Shown here: one piece after another, positions 17,174 through 21,747 of the stretch
How the letters are laid out: each line of letters starts with the position of its first letter
Position numbering within the stretch: position 1 is the first letter of the stretch
Made by a program: the position numbers and the translations under genes
Origin: Paramoeba atlantica
Taxonomy: Eukaryota > Protista > Discosea
Reading direction: 5' to 3'
Assembly (NCBI GenBank): GCA_977017575.1
Contig: CDRNVI010000004.1
Coordinates: forward strand, 1-64,000
DNA: 64,000 nt
Notes under the pieces: model-generated
The model's database searches: none
The model's input: only the letters and a program-made list of their open reading frames with translations
Told to the model about the DNA's origin: nothing

Positions 17174-18303
17174 GTGACTTATTCGCTGTGGGGGGTTTAT
17201 TAATATGGGTAATGCCCACTTATATTGCACCCACTTTTCTATTTTTTGGGTCAAACTGTGCCACAGAGTTGAAGTGGACAGCATAACCTAAAAAGCTACT
17301 GGATCACACGCCCGGTCACACAACATAGGGAAACAAGTACACAATCCTGCGGAAGGGACAAACGTTGGTTCTGAGAACGCGCCCCCACTCCCTTCAGTGC
17401 GCGGGGGCGCTAAAATATAATTCTGTCTCAGGGCTACACCCACAGTTGGGCTTTGCTCACAGACGTTCAAAGTTGGGCCTTACCTCCAGACAGGTAAACT
17501 AGGAGTCTTCTCAATATTTCCCACAGCCCTAACATGGGGCAGCATGGTCCAACATGGGACCTCCTAGCGGTCTTCCCCGCCACTGCCATGTGGCACTGAC
17601 GCCAAGCTTTTTTATTGTGGCATTTTATCTGCCCGCAGGCATTTTATCTGCGCATGGGCATTTGACGTGTAATGTGGTGAACTATAAGCATACTGCAACA
17701 TTTTTTTGACGTAAAGTAGGCGGAAGGAGGAAATGAGATAAAGTGTGTGAAGTTACGCTGCGCAAGAAAACATTTCAATGCATTCATATCATTATTTTGA
17801 AAGTGGGTGCAATATAAGTGGTCTGTACCCATTAATATTATTAATAATTCAATATGCATTTATACGAGCGGCTGCGAGTGACACACGAGGAGCCCCTCGC
17901 ATGTGGAGGAGCCCCGACATGTGGTCGGCGTCATTTGCAGCAGTATGGTGGCAGTACCAGGGAAAACTGCGGGGAGATCCAGAAAGCTCATTTTACACAT
18001 CACACAAATACAGAGTTTGGCATTTCCCGGCCCTCGGTATCAGCACTTCATAAGGAGTTGTCGTTGGTACAGCCCATTTACCTGCGTCAGGCGTAGGCTC
18101 CTACCTACTTCCCGCGTAGGTTGAGGTGTATATAATGATGCTGGAAGCATCATCATCGACTCCATAAGGAGATCCCCATCAATGCTCCTTTTCGGGATGA
18201 AAATATTGTTTGATACAAAATTAAGAGCGAGAAATCTGAGTGTTAAAGCCCAATAAAAAATTTTGATAATATATTAATAATTCTTTTTTAGGCTCTGGCG
18301 CCC

Positions 18304-19210
18304 GCACATTGATAATGCATACTAAGCGGCACATTGATAATGCATATAGCACAGCGATATTGCATATAGCACATTGATAATGCATATAGCACATTGATAA
18401 TGCATATAGCACATTGATAATGCATATAGCACATTGATAATGCATATAGCACATTGATAATGCATATAGCACATTGATAATGCATACTAAGCGGCACATT
18501 GATAATGCATATTAAGCGGCACATTGATAATGCATATAGCACATTGATAATGCATATAGCCCATTGATAATGCATATAGCACATTGATAATGCATATAGC
18601 ACATTGATAATGCATATAGCACATTGATAATGCATATAGCCCATTGATAATGCATATAGCACATTGATAATGCATATAGCACATTGATATTGCATATAGC
18701 ACATTGATAATGCATACTAAGCGGCACATTGATAATGCATATTAAGCGGCACATTGATAATGCATATAGCACATTGATAATGCATATAGCCCATTGATAA
18801 TGCATATAGCACATTGATAATGCATATAGCACATTGATAATGCATATAGCACAGCGATATTGCATATAGCACATTGATAATGCATATAGCACATTGATAA
18901 TGCATATAGCACATTGATAATGCATATAGCACATTGATAATGCATATAGCACATTGATAATGCATATAGCACATTGATAATGCATACTAAGCGGCACATT
19001 GATAATGCATATTAAGCGGCACATTGATAATGCATATAGCACATTGATAATGCATATAGCCCATTGATAATGCATATAGCACATTGATAATGCATATAGC
19101 ACATTGATAATGCATATAGCACATTGATAATGCATATAGCCCATTGATAATGCATATAGCACATTGATAATGCATATAGCACATTGATATTGCATATAGC
19201 ACATTGATAA
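18304..19210. repeat. Tandem array of 20-bp unit GCACATTGATAATGCATATA (~44 units) with 500-bp higher-order periodicity
   Basis: Seen directly. Variant units recur 500 bp apart (18351/18851, 18486/18986, 18561/19061, 18641/19141, 18681/19181). Confidence 0.97.
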
Positions 19211-19437
19211 GAGTGACAAAGACATCCGATTCTTATCCATAAATGTGCGTCCTTTATATACACGGGCATGTACTTATGCGCGTTACACTAATATCACACA
19301 GCCTTTCGACTTCGCAAATTGCTTCCCACTAACGACACACATTCTTGTCTTGCAAACGGGTAAACAAGGTCTAGGCTTTGCTAGGGGTTGGGTATGGTGT
19401 CTGGGTTCATTGGCCCGGCCGGCCCCTCCGTGCGTTC

Positions 19438-19549
19438 GGCCTCTCATATTCCCCAAAACAACTACCACCTTCCCCCCATTTATCAGGGGTCGCTCGCGCG
19501 ACCCCCGCTAAATAGGGGGGGAAGGTGGTAGTTGTGGGGTATGGAGGCC
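19438..19549. other. Long GC-rich hairpin (~110 nt) in the foldback core
   Basis: acaactaccaccttcccccc (19458-77) pairs perfectly with 19516-35. Inner stem ggggtcgc/gcgacccc; outer pairing cccc/gggg and ggcct.tcat/atggaggcc. Confidence 0.9.
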
Positions 19550-19626
19550 TCTCGCAACTCCGGGGCCTCACCGGGAGCAGAGACGAGTGTTCACTATTTC
19601 TTGAAAACACCTTTAATTTCCAAACA

Positions 19627-19921
19627 ATGCATCATCAATGTGCTGTATGCATTATCAATGTGCTGTATGCATTATCAATGTGCTGTATGCATTATCAATG
19701 TGCTGTATGCAATATCAATGTGCTATATGCATTATCAATGTGCTATATGCATTATCAATGTGCAGTAACTATGCAATATCAATGTGCCGCTTAGTATGCA
19801 CTATCAATGTGCTATATGCATTATCAATGTGCTATATGCATTATTAATGTGCTATATGCATTATCAATGTGCGGTACGTTATGCATTATCAATGTGCAGT
19901 AACTATGCATTATCAATGTGC
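19627..19921. repeat. Inverted array of the same 20-bp unit (about 14 units)
   Basis: (tatatgcattatcaatgtgc)n, including the reverse complement of the left-array variant gcatactaagcggcac at ~19783. Confidence 0.95.
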
Positions 19922-20829
19922 GAGTGGGTCTTCGTTAAACGCGGTGGTTGTTTTCAACTTAGAAGTCACTCATGCTGCGCGCTTCGCGTTGAAAACTACC
20001 GCTGCGTTTAACGAAGAGCTTAAAAAAGAAAATTTAGCCTGGAAAACGGAAAGATCATAGCCAAAAATAGCCGAATTTTGGGTAAAAATGGGGTGATTTT
20101 CGCGTATTTTTGCTGTCAGAGCACTAAATCCGACATTTGCGCGTGGGAAATCACTCGTAGGCATGAATGAAAGCCTACCGAACGTATTAGGTAGAGAATA
20201 CGACTCCAACCATACCATTCTTTCGACATAAAAATGCCCCTCAAGGTCCGAAAAATACGGTTTCACATTTTTTAGTCAAAAATGGGTCATTTTGAGGGGC
20301 GCACCACGGTTTGAGAAAGTAATGCCTTGCGAAAACAACGGCGTAGAAAGCTAGTGTTGGTCCCAAACTATCAAAATACAATAGGGGAAACGATTTTGGA
20401 AAAATATTTTTTTTGCCATTTTTTTCGCCAAGTTGAATTTTTTTTCAAAATTTTTTTTCCGAAAAATTCCAACTTGGCGGACCCGTCCTGCTGATACGCG
20501 GGGGGGTCACCCCCGGGTAGGGGCGTGGAAAATGCGCGCCAACACCCCGGCTACCCTTTCTGCGGTTTTTTATCGAAAACTAATTTTTTCGAAAAAAATT
20601 GCTCGACCATGACACCCCCCCCTGGACCCCCCATTTTTTTCAATTTTTTTTTTCAGTTTTGGACGACCGGAGCCCCCTTTTGTATTTTTTTCTTCTATTA
20701 TATTACTGTGTTCCCCTTTATATTTTCACTGTTTTTGTTCACTTTTTTTTCAATAATCGAGTGTAGAGCGGTAGTTTTACAACCACCGCAATCTATCAAA
20801 AATAATTTTGTTCAATAATAATTGTTTCG

Positions 20830-21044: not shown

Positions 21045-21747
21045 TTTTCTTTTTTAGGCTCTTCGTTAAACGCGGTGGTCGTTTTCAACTTCGAAGTCAC
21101 TCATGATGCGCGCTTCGCGTTGAAAACCACCGCGTTTAACGAAGAGCCTAAAAAAGAAAAATCGTGAAAAGATCATGAATAATCTACTTTTTTGGGGGAA
21201 AAGTTCGATTTTTCGGCAAAAATTGCGAAATTTTACACCGAATTTGGGCCGTTTTGGATGCCTTCCCAGTAGGGGCAGGAGTCGACTCTGTCGAAAAAAG
21301 CGTCGTAGAATGGTAGCTGAGGTCCCAAACTCTCCGAATACGATTTAGGAGTCGATAATAATAATATTTTTACTTTTTTTGGGGTCAAAAAAAAACAATT
21401 GGTCACCCTAAAAATTTCGGAAATTTTGACCTTGTCGGACCCCTCCTGCGTGTACCAGGGTGGGGTACCCCCAGGGGGGCGGTGGAAAATTATCGCCGCG
21501 GCCTACTCTACCACTTCCCTGCGCTCGATTTTAAAAAGCAAAAAATTCGAAAAAAAATTCGCGACGTATACCCCCCCCCCATGGACCCCACATTTTTTTG
21601 AATTTTTTTTTTCAGTTTTGGACCACCGGGGCCCCTTTTTATATTTTTTTCTTCTATTATATTACTGTGTTTCTCTTTATATTTTCACTGTTTTTGTTCA
21701 CTTTTTTTTTATAATCGAGGGTAGAGCGGTAGTTATACAACCACCGC
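21045..21747. mobile_element. P-unit copy B with intact 116-bp terminal palindrome
   Basis: 35-bp perfect inverted repeat (21045-21079 / 21126-21160); 3' hairpin at 21726-21747. Confidence 0.85.

What the first reader, a model, noticed from the sequence alone, without database searches (positions are those of the whole stretch)
18297..19928. Foldback-like transposon made of inverted satellite arrays, with a clean 3-bp TSD
Seen: ~44 head-to-tail copies of a 20-bp unit, a ~415-bp ORF-free core, then ~14 copies in the opposite orientation. TCT flanks the block on both sides, and excising it exactly rebuilds the palindrome found intact at 21045-21160, so it entered as a unit. Each 20-mer is two quasi-palindromes (CATTgatAATG and TGCatataGCA), like repeated protein-binding sites. 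Established: Drosophila FB/Galileo and sea-urchin TU elements have modular long inverted repeats, and CMC/CACTA and PIF/Harbinger elements make 3-bp TSDs. I do not know of such an element in kinetoplastids. The outermost 6 bp of the two ends (GGCGCC versus CCCACT) do not match, so the superfamily is unresolved.
Basis: partly seen in the sequence, partly recalled or inferred. Interest (0 to 1): 0.75.

Follow-up and report, generated by a model that had tools for sequence, protein, structure and literature searches.

The report
Enzyme-less IS30-type transposon with repeat arms
This 1.6-kb block is a real mobile element: a transposase-less offshoot of a bacterial-type (IS30) jumping-gene family that has multiplied in the chromosomes of a kinetoplastid-like protist. 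I found no eukaryotic IS30 lineage in the papers I could search.

Summary

It is a transposon that entered as a unit and makes 3-bp duplications. Five informative independent insertions in the genome have exact 3-bp TSDs.

It is not a Foldback, CACTA or PIF element. Its ends, its units and 291 bp of its core are 96.6-98.6% identical to copies that carry an IS30-family transposase gene. Intact sister genes score 214-253 bits against a cut-off of 80 and have a DD(33)E triad.

All transposase-less copies share one deletion junction, so one deletion derivative multiplied.

The terminal 25 bp matches the inverted repeat of a verrucomicrobial IS30 relative at 16 of 25 positions. The arrays are therefore amplified inner parts of that repeat, probably transposase-binding sites.

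Array length changes after insertion: a 99.5-99.9% identical sister locus lacks 505 bp of array.

All four transposase copies of this subfamily that I read are broken.

Earlier notes of this scan report the IS30 lineage elsewhere in this genome. This report adds the non-autonomous member, its origin and the link to bacterial inverted repeats.

The parts
18294..18296 (.). left copy of the 3-bp target-site duplication (TCT)
18297..18321 (+). A-end: tip GGCGCC plus the first unit. This is the terminal 25 bp that resembles the inverted repeat of bacterial IS30 relatives.
   Evidence: The exact 23-mer occurs at 26 places in the genome. It matches the Akkermansiaceae IS inverted repeat at 16 of 25 positions; shuffle p about 1e-5 for the best of 20 comparisons.
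18303..19211 (+). A-side array, about 44 units of 20-25 bp, organised in about 230-bp higher-order blocks
   Evidence: The sister locus on C9 lacks 505 bp of it.
19211..19212 (.). deletion junction where about 1.25 kb holding the transposase gene is missing
   Evidence: The same junction is found in L001, L003, L004, L005, L006, L007 and L068. Transposase-bearing copies L042 and L052 show both flanks of the deleted piece.
19212..19406 (+). remnant of the region downstream of the transposase gene
   Evidence: The 291 bp from 19212 to 19502 is 96.6-98.6% identical to L042, L051 and L052, where it follows the IS30-type ORF.
19407..19579 (.). 173-bp hairpin module with sharp borders
   Evidence: 96.6-100% identical in elements whose transposases are only about 65% identical to this subfamily's, with unalignable flanks. 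DNA fold -62.2 kcal/mol, z -9.0. No Rfam family reaches its threshold.
19627..19921 (-). B-side array, about 14 units, inverted relative to the A side
19906..19928 (-). B-end: tip CCCACT plus the first unit (read on the minus strand)
   Evidence: The exact 23-mer occurs at 18 places in the genome.
19929..19931 (.). right copy of the TSD (TCT)
18281..18296 (.). left piece of the interrupted host palindrome
19929..20032 (.). right piece of the interrupted host palindrome
21047..21160 (.). intact paralogue of the host palindrome (empty-site reference), one copy of a very abundant repeat
   Evidence: The genome search gave 1129 first-look candidates, and all 40 scored matched at 93-100%.

Best explanation
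The block is a non-autonomous member of an IS30-derived DNA-transposon lineage that lives in this eukaryotic (kinetoplastid-like) nuclear genome.

Shown:
- It arose from a transposase-bearing element of the same subfamily by one internal deletion of about 1.25 kb.
- That deletion derivative then spread to at least five independent loci.
- Insertions make 3-bp target duplications.
- The arms are arrays of a 20-bp unit that is also the inner part of each terminal repeat, and every subfamily has its own unit variant.
- The arrays change length after insertion by gain or loss of multi-unit blocks.

Inferred:
- The units are binding sites for the HTH domains of the IS30-type transposase, which is supplied in trans.
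- The enzyme cuts at the conserved tips (GGCGCC at one end, CCCACT at the other) and joins them to a target cut with a 3-bp stagger.
- By analogy with bacterial IS30 members, movement may go through a copy-out-paste-in circle. That step is untested.
- The 173-bp hairpin inside the core is most likely a separately spreading passenger, not part of the transposition machinery.

All four transposase copies of this subfamily that I could read are broken. This copy is therefore probably immobile now, unless a sister subfamily's enzyme cross-mobilises it.
For: Family and ends:
- 63 A-ends and 37 B-ends lie in the genome, against 0 for reversed controls.
- At least 11 A/B pairs of 250-1717 bp sit in inverted arrangement.

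TSDs:
- Exact 3 bp with a differing fourth base at five informative independent sites: TCT, GTC, GTT, GGT, CAT. Chance is about (1/64)^5.
- GGG and CCC at two G-run sites.

Empty site: rebuilt without a gap.

Partner enzyme:
- L042 carries A-end, 5 units, an IS30-like gene and then core 19212-19502.
- L066 carries the 3' part of the gene, the hairpin, the B array and the B-end.
- Intact sister ORFs hit NF033563 (IS30 family) at 214-253 bits against a cut-off of 80, over 257-266 of the 267 profile positions.
- D178, D232 and E266 are conserved, with 33 residues between the second D and the E, in an alignment with verrucomicrobial IS30 transposases.

Origin and spread:
- One shared deletion junction in seven loci.
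- Subfamily-specific units flank every transposase subfamily.
- The terminal 25 bp matches the inverted repeat of an Akkermansiaceae IS30 relative at 16 of 25 positions, shuffle p about 1e-5 for the best of 20 comparisons.
- A Verrucomicrobiaceae relative has GGCGG tips and a 3-bp TSD.
- The C9 sister locus is 99.5-99.9% identical but 505 bp shorter in the A array, and its unit string is a sub-string of the window's.
Against: - No binding or transposition was measured; the role of the units is inferred.
- No intact transposase of this subfamily was found. L042 has three frameshifts and G in place of the first catalytic D. L051 and L052 each have one in-frame stop. L066 is 5'-truncated with one stop.
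- No abutted B-end/A-end junction, the hallmark of IS30 circles or dimers, exists in the assembly.
- Two pairs have 2-of-3 TSD matches: C211, an old duplicate of the window insertion, and the composite C29/C49.
- Array lengths rest on the assembly alone.
- That the host is a kinetoplastid was not tested here. I showed only that the window carries eukaryotic genes.
Confidence: 0.85

Rival explanations
1. It belongs to a classical eukaryotic superfamily with 3-bp TSDs or foldback arms (CACTA/CMC, PIF/Harbinger, Foldback/Galileo).
For: 3-bp TSD and subterminal repeat arrays recall CACTA. Arms of tandem repeats recall Foldback.
Against: The termini are GGCGCC and CCCACT, not CACTA. The TSDs are not TWA. 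The only coding partner that shares the ends, units and core is an IS30-family gene. Pfam hits on partner ORFs are HTH_38, HTH_32 and rve, with no Transposase_21 or DDE_Tnp_4 hit.
Confidence: 0.03
2. It is IS30-mobilised, but the long arrays have no role in transposition. They would be neutral by-products of slippage and unequal exchange of the inner terminal repeat, and only the outermost unit would matter.
For: Copy number varies from 4 to 44 between copies and differs by about 25 units between two 99.5-99.9% identical loci. Pairs only 250-275 bp long exist, which can hold only a few units.
Against: Arrays are present next to every transposase subfamily examined, and their units have diverged along with the enzyme. 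That pattern is easier to explain if the units are recognised. The compact bacterial relatives have none.
Confidence: 0.25
3. It is not a transposon insertion. It would be a satellite block spread by segmental duplication or gene conversion between copies of the host palindrome.
For: The C9 and C211 copies share flanks with the window copy, so some copies did spread by duplication.
Against: Other copies have unrelated flanks, constant ends and different exact 3-bp TSDs. An uninterrupted paralogue of the target exists.
Confidence: 0.02
4. The size or arrangement of the arrays is an assembly artefact.
For: Arrays of 20-bp units are hard to assemble. Two near-identical loci differ only in array length. 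No reads were available.
Against: The same plus-array, core, minus-array arrangement recurs at ten or more loci on different contigs. The longer array is an ordered higher-order duplication of the shorter one, not noise.
Confidence: 0.08

Closest known systems
Bacterial IS30 family (IS30, ISApl1, and the verrucomicrobial relatives found here)
   Same: The partner transposase matches the family profile almost end to end, with HTH domains and a DD(33)E triad. TSDs are short: 3 bp here and in relative L074, 2 bp for ISApl1 (PMC5821093). The terminal 25 bp resembles a relative's inverted repeat, including the GGCG tip.
   Different: It sits in eukaryotic chromosomes. Autonomous members are about 2.1-2.5 kb, against 1.08-1.23 kb for the bacterial relatives. 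The inner part of the repeat is amplified into arrays of up to 44 units. The outer six bases of the two ends differ. Non-autonomous deletion derivatives have multiplied. No circle-type junction was seen.
Foldback (Drosophila FB), Galileo, sea-urchin TU elements
   Same: Long inverted arms made of tandem short repeats, variable in length between copies, around a non-coding or optional middle.
   Different: Those elements use MULE-like or P-type enzymes and make 7-9 bp TSDs (my own knowledge). Here the enzyme is IS30-type and the TSD is 3 bp.
CACTA / En-Spm subterminal repeats and Ac/Ds-type deletion derivatives
   Same: Multiple short transposase-binding motifs inside both ends. Non-autonomous members arise by internal deletion and are moved in trans. 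CACTA elements also make 3-bp TSDs.
   Different: No CACTA termini and an unrelated transposase. The units form strict head-to-tail arrays rather than scattered motifs.
Merlin relics in Bodo saltans and Perkinsela (Lopes et al. 2021, PMC8101967)
   Same: A DNA-transposon enzyme of a type related to bacterial IS elements, found in non-trypanosomatid kinetoplastids.
   Different: Those copies lack recognisable TIRs and TSDs and were judged ancient and immobile. This family has defined ends, exact TSDs, copies 96-100% alike and intact ORFs in sister subfamilies.

Membership tests
IS30 family | Transposase matching the IS30 family profile (HTH domains plus DDE catalytic core) | tested here: met
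   The window element has no gene. Copies that share its ends, units and core carry one. Intact sister ORFs score 214-253 bits on NF033563 against a cut-off of 80.
IS30 family | Catalytic D, D, E with 33 residues between the second D and the E | tested here: met
   D178, D232 and E266 of the L056 ORF are conserved in an alignment with verrucomicrobial IS30 transposases.
IS30 family | Short target-site duplication (2-3 bp in most members) | tested here: met
   Exact 3 bp at five informative independent sites and two G-run sites. Bacterial relative L074 also has 3 bp. ISApl1 has 2 bp (PMC5821093).
IS30 family | Terminal inverted repeats of about 20-40 bp | tested here: inconclusive
   The ends match each other at 21 of the first 25 positions. 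Four of the outer six bases differ. The A-end matches a bacterial relative's repeat at 16 of 25 positions.
IS30 family | Compact 1.0-1.25 kb element with one ORF filling it | tested here: not met
   Autonomous members are 2090-2539 bp and carry arrays. The bacterial relatives are 1075-1226 bp.
IS30 family | Copy-out-paste-in through abutted ends (circle or dimer junction) | tested here: inconclusive
   No B-end/A-end junction with a 0-8 bp spacer exists in the assembly. Transient circles would not be assembled in any case.
IS30 family | Prokaryotic host | tested here: not met
   The window holds eukaryotic genes (synoviolin-type RING ligase, MKT1, aminopeptidase P). The unit 40-mer is absent from 185,579 prokaryotic species genomes.
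Foldback / Galileo | Long inverted arms built of tandem repeats | tested here: met
Foldback / Galileo | MULE-like or P-type transposase and 7-9 bp TSD | tested here: not met
   The partner enzyme is IS30-type and the TSD is 3 bp.
CACTA / CMC | CACTA...TAGTG termini with a CACTA-type transposase | tested here: not met
   The termini are GGCGCC and CCCACT. No such enzyme is linked to these ends.
PIF / Harbinger | TWA target duplication and a DDE_Tnp_4 transposase | tested here: not met
   The TSDs are TCT, GTC, GTT, GGT, CAT and GGG. No such enzyme was found.

The most novel reading that the evidence does not exclude
The IS30-derived elements of this protist form an undescribed eukaryotic DNA-transposon superfamily. 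On this reading it was acquired once from Verrucomicrobiota-like bacteria. It was then rebuilt for life in a nucleus by amplifying the transposase-binding part of its inverted repeat into arrays. It now has its own parasites: transposase-less derivatives such as this one, and a 173-bp hairpin that hops or converts between subfamilies.
Probability: 0.55. Interest if true: 0.85.

Novelty: new variant of a known kind. Interest (0 to 1): 0.72.

Why it matters
Eukaryotic cut-and-paste superfamilies each have a bacterial IS cousin, but I know of none for IS30 and found none in the papers I could search. Published surveys also treat kinetoplastids as nearly free of DNA transposons: only Merlin relics are reported (PMC8101967), and none in 57 trypanosomatid genomes (PMC12278014).

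This genome shows a bacterial IS lineage caught after the jump. It has defined ends, exact TSDs, several subfamilies, and a non-autonomous derivative whose single origin can be read from one deletion junction. The link between the bacterial inverted repeat and the 20-bp unit gives a concrete, testable account of how foldback-like arms of binding sites can arise from a simple IS end.

Tried and rejected
- Candidate long elements: I looked for an autonomous copy between distant end pairs (C10/C58, C44 638-648 kb, C30, C53). Those stretches hold unrelated genes (LRR proteins, a Tc1-like gene, a CENP-B-type gene) and are not single elements.
- B-ends facing each other on C53 have no matching TSD.
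- Rfam on the window and, at a permissive threshold, on the element gave only weak hairpin-type miRNA matches far below threshold.
- A search for abutted ends found nothing.
- The exact unit 40-mer was absent from JGI metagenomes and from prokaryotic genomes.
- Literature searches for a eukaryotic or kinetoplastid IS30 found nothing relevant.
The short pairs on C34, C69, C6, C26 and C59, the C87 tandem run and wider C9 flanks were therefore not read.
- The aminopeptidase search showed only that the host is a deep-branching eukaryote: the best named hits are 40-43% identical, in fungi, animals and Trypanosoma.
Full report
**1. The observation**

- Tandem Repeats Finder reports a 20-bp array of 43.6 copies at 18304-19210. 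It also has a 230-bp higher-order period.
- A second array of 13.9 copies lies at 19627-19921. The two are inverted relative to each other, with arms up to 137 nt at 93-95% complementarity.
- The element runs from 18297 (GGCGCC...) to 19928 (...GAGTGGG), with TCT on each side.
- After removing the element and one TCT, the flanks align without a gap at the junction to the intact palindrome at 21047-21160, at 109 of 117 positions.
- That palindrome belongs to a very abundant repeat. The genome search gave 1129 first-look candidates, and all 40 that were scored matched at 93-100%.
- The core has no credible ORF.

**2. It is a family with fixed ends and 3-bp duplications**

The assembly is 45.7 Mb in 248 contigs.
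- The 426-bp core gives 109 matches.
- A two-unit 40-mer gives 304 matches, against 0 for the reversed control.
- The A-end 23-mer occurs 63 times and the B-end 23-mer 37 times at up to 2 mismatches, again against 0 for controls.
- Ends pair up as A...B in inverted arrangement at many loci, spanning 250 to 1717 bp.
- Reading the flanks gives exact 3-bp duplications whose fourth base differs: TCT in the window, GTC on C38, GTT on C51, GGT for a sister subfamily on C70, and CAT for an autonomous sister element on C67.
- Two insertions into G-runs (C44, C19) give GGG and CCC.
- Two pairs match at only 2 of 3 bases. C211 is an old duplicate of the window insertion: it sits at the same palindrome site and its right flank is 86-88% identical. 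C29/C49 is a composite.

**3. The superfamily**

One A-end, on C44 (locus L042), is followed by five units and then a degenerate gene. After the gene comes core 19212-19502 at 96.6% identity.
- The same 1.66-kb piece recurs on C38 and C87 (L052, L051). There the 291-bp core piece is 98.6% identical to the window.
- Locus L066 on C30 carries the 3' part of the gene, the hairpin, a B-side array and the CCCACT end.
- The gene is an IS30-family transposase. A search with its longest open piece gives 142 matches in the genome, falling into several subfamilies at 45-100% identity.
- Intact sister ORFs of 315-362 aa hit NCBIfam NF033563 (IS30 family transposase) at 214-253 bits against a cut-off of 80. 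The hits cover 257-266 of the 267 profile positions. Pfam gives HTH_38, HTH_32 and rve.
- In an alignment with verrucomicrobial IS30 transposases, the triad D178, D232, E266 is conserved, with 33 residues between the second D and the E.
- The nearest proteins outside this organism are 42-48% identical, and every one that carries a name is an IS30-family transposase. The closest genomic loci come from aquatic Verrucomicrobiota.
- On a quick maximum-likelihood tree, 17 copies from this organism form one side of a branch with 100% support, against 45 of the closest outside proteins. Those outside proteins were sampled by similarity to the query and are mostly unnamed.

**4. Origin of the window element**

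All transposase-less copies that I could read (L001, L003, L004, L005, L006, L007, L068) share one junction. A unit is joined directly to AGTGAC, the six bases that lie about 1.25 kb further on in the transposase-bearing copies.
- A single deletion derivative therefore multiplied.
- The loci with unrelated flanks number at least five: C4/C9, C67, C38, C29/C49 and C44.
- Their cores are 96-100% identical.
- The four transposase-bearing copies of this subfamily are all broken. L042 has three frameshifts and a G at the first catalytic D. L051 and L052 each have one in-frame stop. L066 is 5'-truncated and has one stop.
- Sister subfamilies keep intact, nearly identical ORFs at several loci.

**5. 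The arrays**

Every subfamily has 19-24-bp arrays next to the start of its transposase gene and at the far end, each with its own unit variant.
- The compact bacterial relatives are 1075-1226 bp, have 25-41-bp inverted repeats and have no arrays.
- One of them (L074) has GGCGG tips and a 3-bp TSD, GAG.
- The first 25 bp of the window's A-end matches the inverted repeat of the Akkermansiaceae element L071 at 16 of 25 ungapped positions. The shuffle p is about 1e-5 for the best of 20 comparisons, and other end/arm pairs reach 12-15 of 25.
- The 20-bp unit is therefore the inner part of an ancestral IS30 inverted repeat, copied many times. In bacterial IS30 the inverted repeat is where the transposase binds (established knowledge). 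This is the best available support for reading the units as binding sites. Binding itself was not measured.

**6. Array dynamics**

Contig C9 carries the same insertion with the same flanks at 99.5-99.9% identity, but its A-side array is 505 bp shorter.
- Written as strings of unit variants, the C9 array is a sub-string of the window array. The window array repeats a block of about 11 units.
- The arrays thus grow or shrink in place by multi-unit steps.
- The 44 copies need not have been present at insertion.
- Whether C4 and C9 are alleles or a recent duplication could not be settled.

**7. The hairpin in the core**

Positions 19407-19579 fold into a long hairpin: -62.2 kcal/mol as DNA, z -9.0.
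- This 173-bp module is 96.6-100% identical in elements whose transposases are only about 65% identical to this subfamily's.
- Its borders are sharp and its flanks cannot be aligned between those elements.
- Some subfamilies lack it altogether: no match in L055, L056, L059 or L067.
- I read it as a passenger that spreads between subfamilies by insertion or conversion. A conserved cis-element is the alternative.
- The three A-side transposase copies all break at the centre of this hairpin.

**8. Mechanism and limits**

- The 3-bp stagger and the fixed ends are shown.
- Trans-mobilisation by an IS30-type enzyme is inferred from the shared ends.
- The copy-out-paste-in route is taken from bacterial IS30 members (PMC5821093) and is untested. 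No abutted-end junction is present in the assembly.
- The host is eukaryotic. The window carries a synoviolin-type RING ligase, MKT1, aminopeptidase P and other genes, mostly on one strand.
- The label "kinetoplastid" comes from earlier notes of this scan and was not tested here.

**9. Earlier notes of the scan, and tools**

I reached the IS30 assignment, before opening the notes. Notes s1-369804, s1-389479, s1-369910 and others report the same IS30 lineage elsewhere in this genome, so the lineage was found before on other DNA of this genome.

New in this report:
- the non-autonomous member and its single deletion origin;
- the clean empty site;
- the growth of the array in place;
- the near-identity of the hairpin across subfamilies;
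- the similarity of the element's end to bacterial inverted repeats.

Noticed in passing
window 21047-21160, 19929-20032; genome-wide: The host palindrome (about 118 bp) is a very abundant repeat, with 1129 first-look candidates. On contig C71 it recurs at a 3420-bp spacing, so there it is part of a larger tandem unit.
   Followed up: partly
window 19407-19579; L053, L060-L063, L065, L066: The 173-bp hairpin module is 96.6-100% identical across IS30 subfamilies that are otherwise far diverged. It has sharp borders and no TSD that I could see. It may be a second-order mobile passenger or a conversion tract.
   Followed up: partly
G000:C87:199294-203853: Ten A-ends in the same orientation at about 560-580 bp spacing: a tandem run built from part of the element.
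   Followed up: no
flanks in L005, L007, L008/L009, L011, L047, L054: About six of sixteen distinct A-end flanks lie in the same G-run motif (GGTCCAGGGGGG or its complement) of another repeat. This suggests a target preference.
   Followed up: partly
L044:350 and L045:5107 (G000:C30:180349-195106): Two B-ends face each other 14.7 kb apart, with similar flanks and LRR-protein genes between them. This is probably a large inverted duplication, not one element.
   Followed up: partly
L042:1880-1926: In the transposase-bearing copy, the loop of the hairpin is inverted relative to the window copy. This copy and its two sisters all end at the centre of the hairpin.
   Followed up: no
L041:4915-5850; L042:4501-5478: There is a Tc1/IS630-like ORF (HTH plus weak DDE_3) and an ORF with a CENP-B N-terminal DNA-binding domain near IS30-type ends. 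Other DNA-transposon types share these regions.
   Followed up: no
L074:1098-2172: A Verrucomicrobiaceae IS30-family element of 1075 bp has 41-bp near-perfect inverted repeats, GGCGG tips and a 3-bp TSD (GAG).
   Followed up: partly
L048:547 and L048:2001 (G000:C3): Two A-ends with identical 12-bp flanks lie 1454 bp apart in the same orientation: a local tandem duplication that includes an element end.
   Followed up: no
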